Shown one piece after another: positions 42,330-50,268 of a stretch of 64,000 bases of DNA (position 1 is its first letter; every line of letters begins with the position of its first letter). The notes beneath the pieces were generated by a model that was given only the letters and a program-made list of their open reading frames with translations, did no database searches and was not told the origin of the DNA. The position numbers were made by a program, and so were the translations under genes. The DNA lies in NCBI GenBank assembly GCA_025594325.1, contig JANHCV010000011.1:806001-870000 (forward strand), in the 5' to 3' direction. This DNA comes from Blastocladiella emersonii ATCC 22665 (taxonomy: Eukaryota; Fungi; Blastocladiomycota).

Positions 42330-42972
42330 TTCGATAGGTTCCGTCGTGTTTACAAGTTACATGCGGCCGTGGATACGGCGCCGTGGTGGGGTCGCTCGGC
42401 GATCGCTCGGCGATGGCCGCGGTCAGCGTGGCGCAAAAGTGAAGAACTGGCAAACGCGTCGGGCCCACGTGACGCGTTGCTATCATGATCGCCATCACGG
42501 CCGCGTCGAGCTCTCGCGATGGACCACCGCCGCCACCACCGTGCACGCCCGAACCACCGTCGGGTCGGATGAGCCATCGCCGCCGCGCGCCCCGACCACT
42601 GAGAGTAAAACCACCGCGAGCGCGACCCTGCGACCGCCGCCACGGCTCACGCCCTCGCTTCGGACGCACCCGGCGTGGCGCGCTCGACTCGGTGAAGAAG
42701 GTATCAGGTTCAGCACGCTGGCCCCAGACAGCGACGGTGACGGTGTGTGCAATGAAGTGAGGTCAAACAGAAGCCACGCGCGTGGTCGGCGGGCCGGTGG
42801 CCGGTGGCGTCCCTCCTCCCGACCACGCAATCGGTGCGCTTGATGGACGCGAAGGCGGCGAGGCGGCGATGGATTTAAATATGAGCGGCCGCCCGCCACC
42901 CTCGAGCTGCTCAGCACACCTCTACTCTAGAAGAGTATCCAACACCATCATCAGCAAGTCGCAGGTTTCGAC

Positions 42973-44675
42973 TTACTACCACGTAGACGCTGGTCGCCTT
43001 TCGCACCCTACACACACACTCTCTCTCCACCAAACCATCAACATGCCCCGCACCACCTCCACCTCGTACACCCCTCGTCGCCGCTGGTCGGTGGTCGCGC
43101 TGGTCGCGCTGCTCGCGTTCGCGCTCCTCGGTTCCGCGCACGCCGCGCCGGCGTCGTCGGGCGAGTGGATCATCGAGTTCAAGAGCGACGCCGACATGGC
43201 GGCCGCCAAGAAGCTCGTGCTCGACTTTTACGCGTCCAAGGGCGTGGCGTCGATTGCGGCCGACCAGGCCGACGTCATCTCGATTGGCGACGGCTACCGC
43301 GCCATGACCATGCCCGCGGCGGACCCGGCGCTCAAGGCCGAGCTCACCAAGCTCGCCAACGTGTCGGCCGTCGAAAAGGAGGCCGAGTACAAGATCATGG
43401 GCACGCAGCGCAACGCGCCCGTCGGGCTTGATCGGATTGACGGCCGCCGCGGCACCGACGGCGCGTTCTCGTTCCCCGACAATGCCGGCCAGGGCGTCAC
43501 GGTCTACGTGATCGACACGGGCATCAACACGCAGCACCCGGACTTCCAGGGCCGCGCGCGGTTCCTGCAGGATTTCACGGGCGAGGGCAACAGCGACCAG
43601 CAGGGCCACGGGTCGCACTGCGCGGGCACCATCGGCGGCGCCACGTTTGGTGTCGCGAAAAAGGCGGACCTCGTCGCGCTCAAGGTGTTTGACCGGTCGG
43701 GCCGCGGGTCCAACACGGCGATCCTGCGCGCGCTGCAGGCCGTGTCGCAGGACGTGCAGCGCACGCGCAAGCCGTCGGTCGTGTCCATGTCGCTCGGCGG
43801 GCCGCGCGCGGGCGGCAACGGCGACAGCACCATGGCGCGCGCGATCCAGTCGCTGGTCCAGCAGGGCGTCAACGTGGTCGTGGCCGCGGGCAACGAGTCG
43901 CAGGACGCGTGCCGCGTGTCGCCGGCGTTCATCCCCGAGGCCATCACGGTCGGCGCGTCCGACCCGCGCAACGACCAGATCGCGTCCTTCTCCAACGTCG
44001 GCCGGTGCGTCGATATCGTCGCGCCCGGCGTCAACATCCAGTCGGTCGACGCCAAGTCGCGCGGGTCCAAGTCGCTCTCGGGCACGTCCATGGCCACGCC
44101 GCACGTCGCGGGCGTCGTCGCCGCGCTCCGGTCCATGGGCATGAGCGCGCAGCAGGCCCAGCAGAAGCTCCTCGCCGACGCCACGCCCAACGTCGTCAAG
44201 GGCAACCTGCGCGGCACCCCCAACAAGTTCCTGTTCATGGACCCCGCGCTCGCCAATGGCGGCGGGAACGGGAACGGCAACGGCGCGGGCCGCGGTGGCC
44301 AGCAGCCGGGTCGCGGTAACGGTAACGGCGGCAACGGCAACGGCGCCAACGACCCGCGCCAGGGCCAGCCCGGTCAGGGTCAGCCCGGCCAGGGCAACGG
44401 CGGGAACGGTGCTGGCCGCGGTGGAAACCAGAACGGCGGTGGCAACGGCGGCCGTGGTCAGCGCGACGGGAACCAGAACGGTGGGAGCGGGAACGGGAAC
44501 CAGCGCGGCGGCAACACCGGTAACGGTAACAACAACAACGGGTCGTGCGGCGCGCCGGCTCGCGCTCGCGCGCGCGGCGGCGTCACGTCCGTGACCAGCT
44601 TTGGCGACGAGGAGTAAGTCAGCAAAGTGTTTGCGCAGCAGGTCCTGCGCGATCACACCTCATAGTATCAATACA
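42973..44675 (+). repeat. Left arm of a 1,703-bp inverted repeat (partner 47827-49529)
   Basis: End points read by eye: the arm starts ttactaccacgtag and ends catagtatcaataca. ORF-track translations in several frames on both strands are identical between the two arms. Confidence 0.93.
43043..44617 (+). CDS. Secreted subtilisin-like serine protease (S8A/proteinase K type) with I9 propeptide and Gly/Asn/Gln-rich tail; copy 1
   Basis: Signal peptide WSVVALVALLAFALLGSAHA. Catalytic triad VIDTG / HGSHCAGT / GTSMATPHVAG; oxyanion AAGN. Intronless. Confidence 0.96.
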   Translation: MPRTTSTSYTPRRRWSVVALVALLAFALLGSAHAAPASSGEWIIEFKSDADMAAAKKLVLDFYASKGVASIAADQADVISIGDGYRAMTMPAADPALKAELTKLANVSAVEKEAEYKIMGTQRNAPVGLDRIDGRRGTDGAFSFPDNAGQGVTVYVIDTGINTQHPDFQGRARFLQDFTGEGNSDQQGHGSHCAGTIGGATFGVAKKADLVALKVFDRSGRGSNTAILRALQAVSQDVQRTRKPSVVSMSLGGPRAGGNGDSTMARAIQSLVQQGVNVVVAAGNESQDACRVSPAFIPEAITVGASDPRNDQIASFSNVGRCVDIVAPGVNIQSVDAKSRGSKSLSGTSMATPHVAGVVAALRSMGMSAQQAQQKLLADATPNVVKGNLRGTPNKFLFMDPALANGGGNGNGNGAGRGGQQPGRGNGNGGNGNGANDPRQGQPGQGQPGQGNGGNGAGRGGNQNGGGNGGRGQRDGNQNGGSGNGNQRGGNTGNGNNNNGSCGAPARARARGGVTSVTSFGDEE

Positions 44676-44735
44676 TCACATAATTAGTATCAATGCAATG
44701 TACATGGCGTCGTAACAGTTGGTTTTCCCCTTTGA

Positions 44736-46972
44736 ATTCACGCGAACAGTGCAGTATTCGATGAATGCGCACTTGCACTACACCGAGTTCGCGACGCCGT
44801 GCGGCGCGAGTCCGAGATCCTGGCCGAGACCGTGGCCATGGCGCCCTTCTACCTCGACCTCATCAAGGACGAGCCCGACCTCGAGTTCGACCAGGGCGTG
44901 ATCCGCATCATGTTCAACGCCGTGAGCCACTCCAACTCGGTAAGGGCCGGGCGGCCGTCCACGGGTCGCGAGGCCGAGTTCGTCAAGCGCGCCTACGAGA
45001 TCTACCCGGCGTCGGCTCGCCCAGCCGGTCGGCCCAAGCCGTCGCGCGACCGCCTCGGTCCTGCCCTTGATTTCGCTGCTGCGTCGTACTGGAACTCGGT
45101 CCGCCACACAGGCAAGAAGAAGGTGATGAAGTTCATCGGTGACCTGGCCGAGGCGCGCGTCCAGCGCAAGGAGGCGCTGTCTCGGACGCGCGCCTTGAAG
45201 GGCATGTCGCAGTCTTCGGTCTCGGGTCTCGGCCGCGGGTTCAAGAAGAAGTCGGCGCGCAACCGCGACTGGTACATGGAGCTGCGGCAGGTCAAGGCCG
45301 ACGCCAACGTGTACCGCGACCGCAACGAGCAGCCGTTTAGGCGCATGCAGCGGCTCGTCGACCTGGCCAAGCGCGACTTCGAGAACGGCCGCACCCTCCA
45401 CCTCATTGAGCCGCCGTCGCTCATCCCCATGCTCGGTGTCCGCCGCCGCACCATCGGCCTCGACATGAAGTCGCTGCGCAGCGTCATCCACCTGCCCGCG
45501 GTTAAGGCGCCGCCCGAGGAGAAGGCGCGCAAGGGCGAGACGCCCGAGGAGAAGGCCGCGCGCAGCGCCCGCATGAGCGCTGCGCACTGGGACCATCTCA
45601 TCGAGGCCCTCGACGGCGTGCTCAAGCCCAAGATCCTGCGCGACGCCGACGACAAGAACAAGTACCACGGCCTCATGTACACGGACGGCTACCTCGCCCG
45701 CGTCGTCTAGGTCAAGGGTGGTGTGCGCGTCAAGAAGGGCCATGGCAACAAGGCGTCGGCCAACGACGGGTCCAACAACGGGGAGGTGTCGGCGGCGACC
45801 TCGGCCAAGGACACCTTCCTGCGCTACAACAACTCGGGCAAGGCCATCTACTCGGAGCCGCGGTGCAAGCATTCGTCCGACGCGTCGGCCACCACGTTGG
45901 CCTCGTCGTTGCCGCCGGCACCGCCCAGCCCGCGCGCCGAGCTCAAGGTCCACTCGCTCAAGACGATCCACATCCCCGAGGGCAAGTACACGGTCTGGAT
46001 GGACCCCGGCGAGAACGACAACTTCACGGCGCTCAGCGTCGACCCCGAGCTGTTTGAGGCCCACGCTGAGCTCATGCGCCTCGTGCTCCGGGCCGCCGAG
46101 CTCGAGCGGGAGGCCGAGTTGCTCAAGGCCAAGCTCGCCGACCCCAAGCTCAAGCGCAAGTCCAGGTCGTTGGTGTCGTCGTCGTCGGTCGAGTCGCCCA
46201 ACGTCGAGATCATGCCCGAGGTCGCCAAGATTGCCCGCGAGGTCGTGTTGTTGGTCGTCCTCGAGAAGTTGCTGTCCCACTCGGTCTCGTCCAAGACGTA
46301 CCACCACCAGACGCTGCACGACAAGATGATCAAGCGTCGCGCCATGTGGCGCGAGGAGGCGGGCATGCCCGAGGAGGACCTCAAGCAGTCGCTCGCCGCT
46401 CGTGGAGACCTCAAGAAGTCGGCTGGTCGTGACTACGTCGCCCAGGCCAAGGCACTCTTTGAGAGCCTCGACAAGCGTTTCGCCGAGGAGTTCCACGACC
46501 GCCCGCCGCGCATGCGGTTCATGGTCGAGGCCCGCGGGCGCAGGTGGTGGTCCGAGCTCGCGTACTCGCTGCGCGACGCAGTCGTCATGGTCGGGTGCAA
46601 CCTACACGGTTTCGGCATGTCTCGTCCAAGCTGAAAGCGCCCGTCACGACCATCATCCGCGAGCTGCGCGCCGCCGGCATCCCCGTGTATCTGGTCGAGG
46701 AGAACTACTCGTCCAAGTGGTGCGCGGCGTGCTTCTTCGCTGGCTCTACGGCCGACAACGAGACCTTCAACCTCACGGGCAAGTCGTAAAAGACGCGGAC
46801 GTGCCACACGTGCGGCGTTCGGGTCCAGCGGGACCGCAACGCCGCGGTCAACATCTTCGGGTTCGCGCTCGGCCACTACCTCTTTGTCCGCGTCGCGCCT
46901 CAGCCTAAGTCCACGTCGTTGTCGTCGTCGTCGCCGCAGGTCTCGCCCTCCTCACTGTCGACTTCGTCCTGA
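44736..46972 (+). pseudogene. Fanzor1 (eukaryotic TnpB-family RNA-guided endonuclease), about 745 codons, disrupted by TAG 45708-45710, a 1-nt frameshift near 46620 and TAA 46787-46789
   Basis: WED-type motif YHGLMYTDG (45681). RuvC-I WMDPG (Asp 46002). VVMVG...SSKLKAP. RuvC-II VYLVEENYSSKWCAAC (Glu 46700). CHTC Zn pair. RuvC-III QRDRNAAVNIF (Asp 46832). Confidence 0.88.
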
Positions 46973-47019
46973 TCTGCCGCCGCCACCACCATCACCACCG
47001 TCTCTACGGTTTCTTCACG

Positions 47020-47180
47020 CGCACGTATCCGAAAGCGATGCAGCGCGTACGGTCCCGGGCGCGCCAAGTCCGCCGTGTGTGGAAAGCGCCCGCGACGCAA
47101 GGGCCTTTTGAGGCCGCGCGTCCTGACCACCGCGTGTGGTCGCCTCGCACCCAACGCGGTGTCTGGCGTCCACTCGTCTG
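47020..47180 (+). ncRNA. Candidate Fanzor omegaRNA scaffold / element right-end region
   Basis: Lies directly 3' of the Fanzor stop and contains several stems. GTATCC-GAAA-G(C)GATGC 47025-47041; GCGCGT...GCGCGC 47043-47064; GGCCT-TTTG-AGGCC 47102-47115; GACCAC-CGCGT-GTGGTC 47125-47141. The sequence becomes more AT-rich after about 47175. Boundaries are unknown. Confidence 0.45.
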
Positions 47181-47826
47181 TTCATTTCTTTGAGGAGTTG
47201 AGAATTGTGTTCTGCGTGTTGTTCATACTTAGAGTACAATGTCGGGTCTCCCTTTCGTTTTTGCGCTCCAACATGGCCATGGCACGCACTCATCCCTCCC
47301 CCACAACAAACGTAATACTCGTTATGGCTCTCTGCCACCGCAAATAACCTCCAACCTCAAAACCACATCGACTTCCTGTGATGAATGGGGAACGTCGTTC
47401 CGAGCACCAACGCGCTCAGGACGCGCTGGATCAGTTGCACGTGACCGCGTTGCGCCACACCTTTTCCCCACCGCTGCGCTGTGAGCAAGCGAAGGCTCAA
47501 TCGCCGTGCATTGTCCGCTCCCGCACCACTCAACGAGCCTCGCCGCGCATAACCATCGAGTGTTAGATTGATTCCAACAATCAGAATCCCATCACAGCGC
47601 GGCACCAGCTCCGCGGCTAGCCTACTTGCCGCTGCGGCGGCCACTACGCAGTCCACCACGAGCATCGATAAGAGGCGAGGGCGAGGGCGAGGCCTTCTTT
47701 TGACCAGCCGCGACCGACCGCGACTCGACTGACGGTGCATGTCTCATCTCCCCGGTTCACCTGACGGCCAAGCCCGTATTTGCAAATGAATCGCGTGCGG
47801 AGCTCGTGTCACATTACTATGATGGC

Positions 47827-49529
47827 TGTATTGATACTATGAGGTGTGATCGCGCAGGACCTGCTGCGCAAACACTTTGCTGACTTACTCCTCGTCGCCA
47901 AAGCTGGTCACGGACGTGACGCCGCCGCGCGCGCGAGCGCGAGCCGGCGCGCCGCACGACCCGTTGTTGTTGTTACCGTTACCGGTGTTGCCGCCGCGCT
48001 GGTTCCCGTTCCCGCTCCCACCGTTCTGGTTCCCGTCGCGCTGACCACGGCCGCCGTTGCCACCGCCGTTCTGGTTTCCACCGCGGCCAGCACCGTTCCC
48101 GCCGTTGCCCTGGCCGGGCTGACCCTGACCGGGCTGGCCCTGGCGCGGGTCGTTGGCGCCGTTGCCGTTGCCGCCGTTACCGTTACCGCGACCCGGCTGC
48201 TGGCCACCGCGGCCCGCGCCGTTGCCGTTCCCGTTCCCGCCGCCATTGGCGAGCGCGGGGTCCATGAACAGGAACTTGTTGGGGGTGCCGCGCAGGTTGC
48301 CCTTGACGACGTTGGGCGTGGCGTCGGCGAGGAGCTTCTGCTGGGCCTGCTGCGCGCTCATGCCCATGGACCGGAGCGCGGCGACGACGCCCGCGACGTG
48401 CGGCGTGGCCATGGACGTGCCCGAGAGCGACTTGGACCCGCGCGACTTGGCGTCGACCGACTGGATGTTGACGCCGGGCGCGACGATATCGACGCACCGG
48501 CCGACGTTGGAGAAGGACGCGATCTGGTCGTTGCGCGGGTCGGACGCGCCGACCGTGATGGCCTCGGGGATGAACGCCGGCGACACGCGGCACGCGTCCT
48601 GCGACTCGTTGCCCGCGGCCACGACCACGTTGACGCCCTGCTGGACCAGCGACTGGATCGCGCGCGCCATGGTGCTGTCGCCGTTGCCGCCCGCGCGCGG
48701 CCCGCCGAGCGACATGGACACGACCGACGGCTTGCGCGTGCGCTGCACGTCCTGCGACACGGCCTGCAGCGCGCGCAGGATCGCCGTGTTGGACCCGCGG
48801 CCCGACCGGTCAAACACCTTGAGCGCGACGAGGTCCGCCTTTTTCGCGACACCAAACGTGGCGCCGCCGATGGTGCCCGCGCAGTGCGACCCGTGGCCCT
48901 GCTGGTCGCTGTTGCCCTCGCCCGTGAAATCCTGCAGGAACCGCGCGCGGCCCTGGAAGTCCGGGTGCTGCGTGTTGATGCCCGTGTCGATCACGTAGAC
49001 CGTGACGCCCTGGCCGGCATTGTCGGGGAACGAGAACGCGCCGTCGGTGCCGCGGCGGCCGTCAATCCGATCAAGCCCGACGGGCGCGTTGCGCTGCGTG
49101 CCCATGATCTTGTACTCGGCCTCCTTTTCGACGGCCGACACGTTGGCGAGCTTGGTGAGCTCGGCCTTGAGCGCCGGGTCCGCCGCGGGCATGGTCATGG
49201 CGCGGTAGCCGTCGCCAATCGAGATGACGTCGGCCTGGTCGGCCGCAATCGACGCCACGCCCTTGGACGCGTAAAAGTCGAGCACGAGCTTCTTGGCGGC
49301 CGCCATGTCGGCGTCGCTCTTGAACTCGATGATCCACTCGCCCGACGACGCCGGCGCGGCGTGCGCGGAACCGAGGAGCGCGAACGCGAGCAGCGCGACC
49401 AGCGCGACCACCGACCAGCGGCGACGAGGGGTGTACGAGGTGGAGGTGGTGCGGGGCATGTTGATGGTTTGGTGGAGAGAGAGTGTGTGTGTAGGGTGCG
49501 AAAGGCGACCAGCGTCTACGTGGTAGTAA
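47827..49529 (-). repeat. Right arm of the 1,703-bp inverted repeat (partner 42973-44675)
   Basis: Reverse complement of the left arm, with the same end sequences and the same length. Confidence 0.93.
47885..49459 (-). CDS. Subtilisin-like serine protease, copy 2 (same 524-aa translation as copy 1)
   Basis: The ORF translation matches 43043-44617 residue for residue. Confidence 0.96.
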   Translation of the reverse strand: MPRTTSTSYTPRRRWSVVALVALLAFALLGSAHAAPASSGEWIIEFKSDADMAAAKKLVLDFYASKGVASIAADQADVISIGDGYRAMTMPAADPALKAELTKLANVSAVEKEAEYKIMGTQRNAPVGLDRIDGRRGTDGAFSFPDNAGQGVTVYVIDTGINTQHPDFQGRARFLQDFTGEGNSDQQGHGSHCAGTIGGATFGVAKKADLVALKVFDRSGRGSNTAILRALQAVSQDVQRTRKPSVVSMSLGGPRAGGNGDSTMARAIQSLVQQGVNVVVAAGNESQDACRVSPAFIPEAITVGASDPRNDQIASFSNVGRCVDIVAPGVNIQSVDAKSRGSKSLSGTSMATPHVAGVVAALRSMGMSAQQAQQKLLADATPNVVKGNLRGTPNKFLFMDPALANGGGNGNGNGAGRGGQQPGRGNGNGGNGNGANDPRQGQPGQGQPGQGNGGNGAGRGGNQNGGGNGGRGQRDGNQNGGSGNGNQRGGNTGNGNNNNGSCGAPARARARGGVTSVTSFGDEE

Positions 49530-50268
49530 TGGAGCGGAGAGTCGAAGCCTGCGACTTTGGATGCGTGTACTCGTCTAGAGTAGTTGAGGTGCTGAACCGA
49601 GTTGAGGGTGGCGGGCGGGTCCCGCTATTTAACTCCCCCGCCTCCCGCGCTCCCGTCGCGAGCAACGCCCAGGCTTCGCGGTACACCGAGCCCGATGTGC
49701 AAGCAACGCAAGAATAGCGTGACCCGCGCCGCGAGGCGCCTGCGTCTCGACTTCAGTGCGCCACCGGACCGCCGATCGGGCGCAAGTGGCTGAGCCCCGC
49801 GACGCGTCGGCGCGCGCCGGCGCGACCATCACTTTGAAACGAGGCGCGTGCGTCGTGAGTGGCTCAGCCACTACCCCCGCCGTGCACCGCGGTGCAGGGA
49901 CAAGGCGGTCGTGCCACGCTCGTGTCGCGGCGTGATGTTTCGTGGGTGACACGGCGCGCGTGAAACGGTCGGGCTCGCAACGGCGAGCCACGACCAGCAT
50001 GCTGGAACAAGGGTTCGCGTGTTGCGGGGCGCGAGAACCTCGTCAATGTGTACGTTCGAGCGAGTTTCGGGTGGATCGTGACTCCGCTGCTGCTGCTGAT
50101 GGTGATGGCCAGTGATTGATCAAGTCTGATCTCGGCCACGTGCCTCGTTGACGCGTCGCGCGTCGCGTTTCACTCTCGCCACCACGCTCGTCGCCTCAGT
50201 GAAGGTACAGCCGGGTCTACTCGATTGCAAAGACAAAATTTCAGCTAGTTTATGACTACGCGCGCGGC

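What the first reader, a model, noticed from the sequence alone, without database searches (positions are those of the whole stretch)
42861..49643. Fanzor enclosed by two identical inverted subtilisin genes (6.6-kb quasi-palindrome)
Seen: arms 42973-44675 and 47827-49529 (1,703 bp each) are reverse complements. Each holds a complete secreted protease gene, arranged tail-to-tail around a 3,151-bp spacer that is mostly Fanzor plus its putative omegaRNA. Inference, with three alternatives: (a) a composite element whose long inverted arms are cargo genes; (b) Fanzor insertion into a pre-existing inverted gene pair; (c) a duplication or homogenisation triggered by Fanzor-made double-strand breaks. 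I do not know of a described Fanzor-protease inverted-arm unit. It may also be an inversion-prone switch, since recombination between the arms would flip the Fanzor.
Basis: partly seen in the sequence, partly recalled or inferred. Interest (0 to 1): 0.85.

Follow-up and report, generated by a model that had tools for sequence, protein, structure and literature searches.

The report
Protease gene palindrome around dead Fanzor
Two mirror-image, letter-for-letter identical copies of a secreted protease gene really do flank a Fanzor gene in the water fungus Blastocladiella emersonii, but the Fanzor is a decayed transposon copy that sits between an older gene pair kept identical by gene conversion, so the arrangement is a familiar kind of palindrome, not a new mobile unit.

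Summary
Arms 42973-44675 and 47827-49529 are 1,703 nt and 100% complementary, 3,151 nt apart. Each arm carries an intact 524-aa S8 subtilase, and the two genes are convergent. The genome is Blastocladiella emersonii ATCC 22665, a PacBio HiFi assembly. In the HiFi-derived k-mer contigs the arms have about twice the depth of the flanks, and both outer junctions are seen, so an assembly artefact is unlikely.

The spacer holds one copy of a multi-copy Fanzor/TnpB-like element (about 44790-47239). This copy is dead: it has two in-frame stops and a 1-nt deletion, all private to it, plus about 2.7% private substitutions. Two other close copies have no protease and no long inverted flanks. The protease occurs only at this locus. 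The composite-element reading is therefore rejected.

Just outside the arms, about 115-127 bp of real but only 74%-identical homology continues. This marks an older inverted paralog pair whose core was homogenised recently, with the tract ending at an 11-bp indel.

Fanzor-triggered conversion and spacer flipping could not be tested here. First-stage notes of this scan, one of them followed up, report similar palindromes or identical-core inverted repeats elsewhere in this genome.

The parts
42846..42972 (.). Left outer flank: diverged homology to the right outer flank (promoter region with a TTTAAATA box).
   Evidence: Local alignment with 49541-49657: 99/134 columns identical, score 81 against a shuffle maximum of 34. 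Alignments.
42973..44675 (.). Left arm of the perfect inverted repeat.
   Evidence: 1,703 nt, 100% complementary to 47827-49529. Arm contigs have depth about 289 against 130-147 for single-copy flanks in run X1.
43043..44617 (+). Subtilase gene, left copy: 524 aa, intronless, intact, with a Gly/Asn/Gln-rich C-terminal tail.
   Evidence: annotated gene, PF00082.
44676..44789 (.). Short spacer segment between the left arm and the inferred left end of the Fanzor element. It has no homology to the other inner flank.
   Evidence: The contig break at 44790 in three runs is the only evidence for the element's left limit, which is therefore inferred.
44790..47239 (+). Fanzor/TnpB-like transposable element copy. 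The right end is defined by comparison with another copy; the left end is inferred. No terminal inverted repeats were found.
   Evidence: BLAST to L006 (92.2%, 45304-47094) and L007 (94.9%, 46185-47239). Homology with L007 ends at 47239. No TIR.
44838..46972 (+). Fanzor reading frame, broken at three places: TAG 45708-45710, a 1-nt deletion after 46618, and TAA 46787-46789. The RuvC D/E/D residues and the CxxC...CxxC zinc ribbon are still readable.
   Evidence: Paralogs P0121/P0122 and other genomic copies read through at all three sites. Pfam Cas12f1-like_TNB. Family profile against PDB TnpB/Cas12f chains.
46973..47239 (+). Conserved non-coding 3' tail of the element, a candidate omegaRNA scaffold. 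The guide would start at 47240.
   Evidence: Conserved with L007 up to 47239 and with L006 up to 47094. The fold is only weakly better than shuffles (z -1.77). No Rfam match. A functional RNA is not shown.
47240..47826 (.). Single-copy spacer DNA between the element's right end and the right arm.
   Evidence: Contig 47157-47840 has depth 147 in X1. No BLAST hit to other loci. No internal palindrome.
47827..49529 (.). Right arm of the perfect inverted repeat.
   Evidence: The loose end at 42973 in runs X2 and X3 spells the right copy's own outer flank, so both outer junctions exist in the reads.
47885..49459 (-). Subtilase gene, right copy, identical to the left copy.
49530..49657 (.). Right outer flank. 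An 11-nt insertion lies directly at the arm edge, followed by diverged homology to the left flank. This flank is closer to the upstream region of paralog P0002 than the left flank is.
   Evidence: right against L003 upstream 49/53, left against L003 upstream 45/57.

Best explanation
This is a small gene-bearing palindrome. An older inverted pair of paralogous secreted-subtilase genes sits between a G-patch gene and the eIF2B-epsilon (GCD6) gene in Blastocladiella emersonii. Its 1.7-kb core (70 bp of 5' leader, the ORF and 58 bp of 3' sequence) was recently overwritten by arm-to-arm gene conversion and is now identical. The outer edge of the conversion tract stopped at an 11-bp insertion/deletion heterology, beyond which the old, roughly 26%-diverged promoter sequences survive. 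One copy of a multi-copy, TIR-less Fanzor/TnpB-type element inserted into the roughly 700-bp intergenic spacer between the two convergent genes and has since decayed into a pseudogene. The Fanzor and the arms are neighbours by insertion, not parts of one mobile unit.

Shown here: the structure, the copy number, the diverged outer homology, the private lesions, and the absence of protease arms at two other Fanzor copies.

Inferred: gene conversion as the homogenising mechanism, the order of insertion and last conversion, and the element's left end.
For: - **Repeat:** the inverted repeat is exact.
- **Copy number and junctions:** arm contigs have depth 286-290, against 130 for the left flank and 147 for the right spacer, in the HiFi-derived run X1. 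Contigs or loose ends carry both distinct outer junctions.
- **Assembly:** it was made from HiFi reads of mean length 10.5 kb, longer than the whole 6.6-kb structure (PMC9730499).
- **Outer flanks:** they are homologous at 74% identity, score 81 against a shuffle maximum of 34. The switch to 100% falls exactly at an 11-nt indel. The right flank matches the paralog L003 upstream region better (49/53) than the left flank does (45/57), so the two copies had separate histories.
- **Protease distribution:** the protease protein is encoded only at these two places. Paralogs at 86% and 73% identity are single genes with no Fanzor beside them.
- **Fanzor family:** close copies exist elsewhere (L006 at 92%, L007 at 95%). 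They are 5'-truncated and have no inverted repeat of 60 nt or more within 6 kb.
- **Decay of this copy:** it has 24 private substitutions and a private 1-nt deletion in 905 aligned nt, and 14 of the 24 are C:G>T:A. Both stops are private. The arms show 0 differences in 1,703 nt.
- **Family membership:** a profile of the family matches TnpB/Cas12f structures at E 3.5e-7 to 1e-4.
Against: - **Inner edges:** they go from 100% identity to no detectable homology. Repeated conversion alone would predict an eroded zone like the outer one. A duplication breakpoint, a deletion or an end-joining junction must lie there.
- **Order of events:** a copy that was already damaged could have been mobilised in trans, so the 2.7% private divergence does not strictly date the insertion before the last homogenisation.
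- **Promoter divergence as a clock:** exchange with the third paralog could inflate it.
- **Depth ratios:** they are clean only in run X1. Runs X2 and X3 are noisy, and all runs come from the sample used for the assembly.
- **Polishing:** Pilon polishing with 65-nt reads could have erased a few real differences between the arms.
- **Left end of the element:** it rests on a contig break only.
Confidence: 0.7

Rival explanations
1. Fanzor-driven homogenisation. Double-strand breaks at or beside the element, made by an active Fanzor copy acting in trans with an RNA guide from this locus or during the element's own transposition, were repaired from the inverted paralog. This overwrote one protease copy and left one homologous edge (outer) and one end-joined edge (inner).
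For: The inner edge of the left arm lies at most 114 bp from the inferred left end of the element, and it is abrupt where the outer edge is graded. This fits one-ended homologous repair plus end joining. Other copies of the family read through at the three lesion sites, so trans-acting protein is conceivable. In bacteria, TnpB cuts the empty donor site and promotes homologous repair (established knowledge of IS200/IS605, cited from memory).
Against: This copy is dead. No expression data are available: no RNA run was listed. No activity has been shown for any B. emersonii Fanzor. First-stage notes report palindromes with identical cores elsewhere in this genome without mention of a Fanzor (unchecked), so a general recombination process suffices. 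Two other Fanzor copies have no duplicated flanks.
Confidence: 0.1
2. A single recent inverted duplication. One protease gene was copied in one step (fold-back or template-switch replication) to the other side of a resident dead Fanzor, with no older pair.
For: There are zero differences in 1,703 nt, the inner breakpoints are abrupt, and the duplicated unit is gene-sized.
Against: A one-step recent duplication does not explain the 115-127 bp of significant but 74%-identical homology directly outside both arms. It also does not explain why the right flank is closer to a third paralog than to the left flank.
Confidence: 0.1
3. A composite mobile element. The two protease genes act as long terminal inverted repeats or cargo of a Fanzor-bearing transposon.
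For: Only the geometry supports this. Fanzors are known to be captured by many transposon superfamilies (PMC3627910).
Against: The arms occur once in the assembly. Other copies of the same Fanzor family end at 47239, well inside the spacer, and carry no arms. Described Fanzor elements have TIRs of 18-33 bp or none. Arm homology fades outward into promoter sequence shared with a solitary paralog.
Confidence: 0.02
4. An assembly or polishing artefact. Only one protease copy exists, or the arms are not truly identical.
For: Short-read Pilon polishing can homogenise repeats. Depth ratios in runs X2 and X3 are noisy.
Against: Depth is twofold in the HiFi-derived contigs. Two different outer junctions and the right inner junction are present as contigs. 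Mean HiFi read length exceeds the whole structure. The 3.15-kb unique spacer and the unique flanks cannot be threaded through a single arm copy.
Confidence: 0.03
5. An invertible genetic switch. Recombination between the arms flips the spacer and changes expression.
For: Perfect 1.7-kb inverted repeats are good substrates for inversion, so both isomers may well exist in a culture (inference).
Against: Both protease promoters lie outside the invertible segment and the arms are identical, so a flip changes neither protease gene. The only gene inside is a pseudogene. No site-specific recombinase gene lies in or beside the unit. Flipping could not be observed with 31-mer contigs.
Confidence: 0.03

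Closest known systems
Gene-conversion palindromes (such as the arm-to-arm converting palindromes of primate sex chromosomes) and inverted segmental duplications in fungi
   Same: Gene-bearing inverted arms surround a unique spacer. The arms are identical or nearly so, while sequence at the edge is much more diverged. There are no transposition hallmarks.
   Different: This one is very small (1.7-kb arms, one gene per arm). It lies in an autosome-like contig of a blastocladiomycete. The inner edges are abrupt and a transposon pseudogene fills most of the spacer.
Fanzor1 elements such as SPu-1 / SpuFz1 of Spizellomyces punctatus
   Same: It is a single-ORF element of about 2.1-2.5 kb in an early-diverging fungus. 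The protein has the D...[ST][ST]xx-C4 zinc ribbon...RD motif set. A conserved non-coding tail follows the ORF and ends at the element's right end. The family is multi-copy, with many partial copies.
   Different: SPu-1 has 33-bp TIRs and TA duplications, and none were found here. Sequence similarity to characterised Fanzors is marginal (Parasitella Fanzor1, E 0.025). This copy is broken, and no omegaRNA or activity is shown.
Composite transposons with long inverted arms (bacterial Tn5/Tn10 type)
   Same: Two inverted identical modules flank a central segment.
   Different: In composite transposons the arms are the mobile modules and encode the transposase. Here the arms are a host protease gene found nowhere else, and the mobile sequence is in the middle.

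Membership tests
Fanzor / TnpB superfamily (the gene in the spacer) | RuvC-like split catalytic triad D...E...D in the C-terminal half | tested here: met
   In the alignment of 12 family members, D236, E448 and D492 (P0121 numbering) are invariant or nearly so. The window copy keeps the matching motifs WMDPGEND, YLVEENYSSK and QRDRNAAVNI.
Fanzor / TnpB superfamily (the gene in the spacer) | Bao and Jurka motif [TS][TS]-x-x-C4 zinc finger-x(5,50)-RD, i.e. the OrfB_Zn_ribbon / Cas12f1-like_TNB domain | tested here: met
   The sequence SSKWCAAC...TCHTCG...RDRN is present. Pfam PF07282 scores E 1.1e-10 and 6.9e-9 on paralogs P0122 and P0121, above the curated cut-off. The window's broken pieces score only below the cut-off, E 1.5e-3 and 1.8e-4. 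The motif definition comes from PMC3627910.
Fanzor / TnpB superfamily (the gene in the spacer) | Significant similarity to experimentally solved TnpB/Cas12f/Fanzor proteins | tested here: met
   The family profile hits TnpB, Cas12f and Cas14a chains at E 3.5e-7 to 2.5e-4. Parasitella Fanzor1 (9cf0) reaches only 0.025 and mimivirus TnpB-like L79 0.0021. Single pieces of the window copy gave no PDB hit. Assignment to Fanzor1 or Fanzor2 was not resolved.
Fanzor / TnpB superfamily (the gene in the spacer) | Intact reading frame and a functional omegaRNA with a guide at the right end | tested here: not met
   There are two in-frame stops and a 1-nt deletion. The 3' tail is conserved up to 47239, but its fold z-score is only -1.77. 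No Rfam family matched and no RNA run was listed. It is a pseudogene copy of the family, not a working system.
Composite or long-TIR transposon (the whole 6.6-kb unit) | The whole unit, arms included, occurs in more than one genomic place or has target-site duplications | tested here: not met
   The protease protein is found only at this locus. Two other Fanzor copies lack arms. Arm homology continues outward as diverged promoter sequence instead of ending at a target site.
Gene-conversion palindrome | Two physical copies in inverted orientation around a unique spacer | tested here: met
   Searches show twofold depth and both outer junctions.
Gene-conversion palindrome | Identity of the arms far higher than that of adjoining homologous sequence, i.e. 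concerted evolution rather than recent origin | tested here: met
   There are 0 differences in 1,703 nt, against 74% identity in the adjoining 115-127 bp. The switch falls at an 11-nt indel. This holds on the outer side only; the inner side shows no homology at all.
Gene-conversion palindrome | Direct evidence of conversion events (polymorphism or outgroup comparison) | not testable with these tools
   No second strain or close species with this locus was available. The B. britannica and Catenaria subtilase loci are not syntenic.
Subtilase S8 (the arm gene) | Peptidase_S8 domain with Asp/His/Ser catalytic motifs | tested here: met
   PF00082 scores E 1.6e-43 over residues 149-383. The motifs VIDTGI, HGSHCAG and GTSMATPH are visible in the translation. 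The nearest relatives are fungal subtilisin/oryzin-like proteases.

The most novel reading that the evidence does not exclude
Breaks made at this locus by the Fanzor family, with active copies elsewhere supplying protein and this element's right end supplying the guide, provoked the repair event that overwrote one protease paralog with the other. This would be a natural case of an RNA-guided eukaryotic nuclease driving gene conversion of neighbouring host genes. The graded outer edge, the abrupt inner edge, and the at most 114-bp gap between the left arm and the element are compatible with this, but they do not require it.
Probability: 0.07. Interest if true: 0.8.

Novelty: new member of a known kind. 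Interest (0 to 1): 0.27.

Why it matters
The biological role of Fanzors in eukaryotes is still open. A Fanzor that travelled with host genes as long inverted arms, or that homogenised its neighbours, would have been a first clue. The evidence points to a coincidence of two ordinary processes: a transposon pseudogene lying in the spacer of a small gene-conversion palindrome.

The locus is still useful in three ways. It documents concerted evolution of a duplicated secreted protease in a blastocladiomycete. It adds a case to what looks like a recurrent pattern of identical-core inverted repeats in this genome. It also carries the longest copy compared here of a Fanzor family that HMMER finds almost only in B. 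emersonii.

Tried and rejected
- **RNA evidence.** No RNA run was listed, so expression of the proteases, the Fanzor and the tail RNA is unknown.
- **Spacer orientation.** The runs are kept only as 31-mer contigs, which cannot span 1.7-kb arms. The flip question is untouched.
- **Head-bearing Fanzor copies.** A word-index search with the N-terminal 290 aa found nothing in the allowed length range. The left end of the element is therefore only inferred, from a contig break at 44790.
- **Terminal inverted repeats of the element.** None were found.
- **Rfam and tRNA scans of the locus.** Nothing relevant came up.
- **Diverged homology on the inner sides of the arms, or to the 3' regions of paralogs.** Scores were at shuffle level. 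By eye, about 25-30 nt just inside each arm share short motifs such as TAGTA..ATGT.ACA, but this is not statistically supported.
- **Synteny in relatives via the protease.** The Catenaria and B. britannica subtilase loci have different neighbours.
- **Direct PDB hits with single pieces of the window's Fanzor.** There were none. Only the family profile worked.
Full report
**1. Observation**

The repeat finder on 40-52 kb and on the whole window returns one long repeat only. Its inverted arms are 42973-44675 and 47827-49529, 1,703 nt, 100% complementary, with 3,151 nt between them.

Each arm holds an uninterrupted 524-codon ORF, at 43043-44617 on + and 47885-49459 on -. The two genes are convergent. 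The protein has Pfam Peptidase_S8 at E 1.6e-43. The translation shows a signal-peptide-like N-terminus, the Asp/His/Ser motifs and a Gly/Asn/Gln-rich tail. The stated coordinates are exact.

**2. Where it is, and whether it is real**

The protease protein is encoded at exactly two places in public assemblies, both at this locus. The locus is on contig JANHCV010000011.1 (1.5 Mb) of GCA_025594325.1. A G-patch gene lies on the left and an eIF2B-epsilon/GCD6-type gene (NTP_transferase, LbH_EIF2B, W2) on the right. Source names of its paralogs identify Blastocladiella emersonii ATCC 22665.

The assembly was built from PacBio HiFi reads of mean length 10.5 kb and polished with Pilon using 65-nt Illumina reads (PMC9730499). 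The reads are therefore longer than the whole 6.6-kb structure.

Four DNA runs of one sample hold the locus as Logan contigs. In run X1, which by its 73-kb contigs and depth I take to be the HiFi run, depths are as follows:

| Region | Depth |
|---|---|
| Left flank contig | 130 |
| Arm contigs | 286-290 |
| Single-copy right part of the spacer | 147 |

Contigs cross from the left flank into the arm. Loose ends at 42973 in runs X2 and X3 spell the right copy's own outer flank, so both outer junctions exist in the data. A contig also crosses the right inner junction. Depths in X2 and X3 are noisy, and all runs come from the assembled sample.

A missing-adapter fold-back artefact would not leave a 3.15-kb unique spacer. 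I put an artefact at about 3%. Pilon may have erased a few true differences between the arms.

**3. The gene in the spacer**

The reading frame from ATG 44838 to the stop at 46970-46972 on the + strand is a TnpB/Fanzor-type protein. It carries these motifs:

- WMDPGEND (RuvC-I Asp)
- YLVEENYSSKWCAAC (RuvC-II Glu, the [ST][ST] pair and the first CxxC)
- TCHTCG (second CxxC)
- QRDRNAAVNI (RuvC-III Asp)

The frame is broken three times: an in-frame TAG at 45708-45710, a 1-nt deletion after 46618, and an in-frame TAA at 46787-46789. Paralogous proteins P0121 and P0122 read Tyr, an unshifted GFGMVSSK and Tyr at these sites. The other genomic copies seen as variant contigs also lack all three lesions.

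The deposited annotation calls a 625-aa product over 44838-46789. That leaves only 74 nt for introns and ends at the second premature stop. I read this as a gene-model artefact.

Pfam Cas12f1-like_TNB is above its cut-off on P0121 and P0122 and below it on the window's fragments.

An exhaustive HMMER search with P0121 found only 16 relatives among 1.84 billion representatives. All 11 whose source was named (P0121, P0122 and nine of the ten looked up; the tenth is an unnamed ENA protein) are from B. emersonii. A profile of 12 of them matches solved TnpB, Cas12f and Cas14 chains at E 3.5e-7 to 2.5e-4, and Parasitella Fanzor1 only at 0.025.

It is therefore a member of the TnpB superfamily in a fungal nuclear genome, which makes it a Fanzor by definition. 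It belongs to a divergent, lineage-restricted branch, and Fanzor1 versus Fanzor2 was not resolved.

**4. The element and its edges**

BLAST of the spacer against two other loci of the family gives these matches:

| Locus | Identity | Window span |
|---|---|---|
| L006 | 92.2% | 45304-47094 |
| L007 | 94.9% | 46185-47239 |

Both copies are 5'-truncated.

Homology with L007 ends sharply at 47239, 267 nt past the stop codon. I take that as the right end of the element. The conserved 46973-47239 tail is the place where an omegaRNA scaffold would lie. Its fold is only marginally better than shuffles (z -1.77), and nothing in Rfam matches it.

The left end is not defined by a second copy. Contigs of three runs all break at 44790, and a near-identical variant of 44790-45109 exists elsewhere. 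I therefore infer a left end near 44790. No terminal inverted repeats were found.

Without the element, the spacer would be about 700 bp: 114 bp on the left and 587 bp on the right. That remainder is single-copy.

**5. Are the arms part of the element? No**

- The protease occurs only at this locus.
- Its nearest paralogs, P0002 (86%, another contig) and P0003 (73%, 530 kb away on the same contig), are solitary genes with no Fanzor sequence beside them.
- L006 and L007 have no inverted repeat of 60 nt or more within 6 kb on either side.
- The family's right end lies 587 bp inside the spacer.
- Described Fanzor elements have TIRs of 18-33 bp or none (PMC3627910 and PMC10432273).

**6. History of the arms**

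Directly outside the arms, the two sides remain homologous for about 115-127 bp, at only 74% identity (99 of 134 alignment columns). The local score is 81, against a maximum of 34 in 300 shuffles.

The switch from 74% to 100% falls exactly at an 11-nt insertion in the right copy. A heterology of that kind is expected to stop a conversion tract; that is my inference. This agrees with first-reader note s1-276265.

The same promoter blocks occur upstream of the solitary paralog P0002. There, the right copy matches 49 of 53 positions and the left copy 45 of 57. The two copies were therefore distinct, well-diverged paralogs before their cores became identical.

On the inner side there is no detectable homology beyond the arms. 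An original duplication breakpoint, a deletion or an end-joining junction must lie there.

**7. Relative timing**

In the 905 nt shared by the window copy, L006 and L007, the window copy has 24 private substitutions and the private deletion, about 2.7%. Fourteen of the 24 are C:G>T:A.

If the arms had evolved independently for that long, some 650 weakly constrained sites (third codon positions and untranslated parts) would be expected to show about 35 differences. None is seen.

The last homogenisation is therefore probably younger than most of the decay of this Fanzor copy. The caveat is that a copy that was already damaged could have been mobilised in trans.

The 26% divergence of the outer flank exceeds the 5-8% divergence between the Fanzor copies compared. 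This suggests the gene pair is older than the insertion. Here too there is a caveat: exchange with the third paralog could inflate the promoter divergence.

**8. Mechanism**

Most likely (about 0.7) this is an old inverted paralog pair. A Fanzor element inserted into the intergenic spacer and decayed, and the 1.7-kb core was homogenised recently by gene conversion between the inverted copies.

The rivals are:

- Fanzor-provoked breaks as the trigger (0.1). This is compatible with the asymmetric edges, but this copy is dead and two other copies have no duplicated flanks.
- A one-step recent duplication (0.1). The diverged outer homology contradicts it.
- A composite element (0.02).
- An artefact (0.03).
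- A regulatory switch (0.03). Both promoters lie outside the invertible part, the arms are identical, and the only enclosed gene is a pseudogene, so a flip would change nothing obvious. Physical flipping is plausible but could not be tested.

**9. Context from the scan**

Notes of this scan report other palindromes in the same genome:

- a 30-kb palindrome with 9.5-kb arms, judged real by a follow-up (s1-076272);
- a 4.19-kb identical core inside diverged arms (s1-292508);
- a 162-bp near-identical core inside diverged inverted arms (s1-256532).

I did not check these. If they hold, identical-core inverted repeats are a general property of this genome and need no Fanzor.

**10. Verdict**

The eye-catching association is best explained by coincidence of a transposon pseudogene with a small gene-conversion palindrome. 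It is a new instance of a known kind and of modest interest.

Noticed in passing
window 44838-46789: The deposited annotation calls a 625-aa protein here. Only 74 nt are left for introns, which bridge the in-frame stop and the frameshift, and the model ends at the second premature stop. The model looks like an artefact that hides a pseudogene and cuts off the RuvC-III motif.
   Followed up: partly
window 46185-47094 compared with L006 and L007: Fourteen of the 24 substitutions private to this Fanzor copy are C:G>T:A transitions. This could reflect deamination-type decay of repeats, such as methylation-linked or RIP-like mutation, in this fungus.
   Followed up: no
L006:6173-7947 and L007:5974-7038: Other copies of the same Fanzor family are truncated at different 5' points (window equivalents 45304 and 46185). 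L007 keeps the 3' end, while L006 loses homology 145 nt earlier. The mode of transposition that gives such 5'-truncated copies is unexplained.
   Followed up: partly
(proteins P0123-P0136): HMMER finds only 16 relatives of this Fanzor among 1.84 billion representative proteins. All 11 whose source was named are B. emersonii proteins of 250-1,055 aa at 23-44% identity. This looks like a large, divergent expansion restricted to one lineage.
   Followed up: partly
window 49541-49616 and L003:9872-9927: A block of about 34 nt upstream of the right protease copy is identical to the upstream region of the solitary paralog P0002, although the coding regions differ by about 14%. It may be a conserved promoter element or a small ectopic conversion.
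   Followed up: partly
window 43022 and 46970 (loose ends in run X4): Contigs of run X4 end in loxP-like letters (ATAACTTCGTATA...). This suggests a Cre-lox mate-pair type library; the letters are library junctions and not genome sequence.
   Followed up: no
window 44257-44617 and 47885-48245: The subtilase ends in a tail of about 120 residues rich in Gly/Asn/Gln (GNGNG repeats). Paralog P0002 has a shorter version. The k-mer depth here is inflated, probably by low complexity and by paralogs.
   Followed up: no
window 43043-44617 / 47885-49459 with spacer 44676-47826: Convergent identical genes 3 kb apart would give a long hairpin RNA if transcription reads through. Whether this feeds RNA silencing of the protease or of the Fanzor was not examined, because no RNA run was listed.
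   Followed up: no
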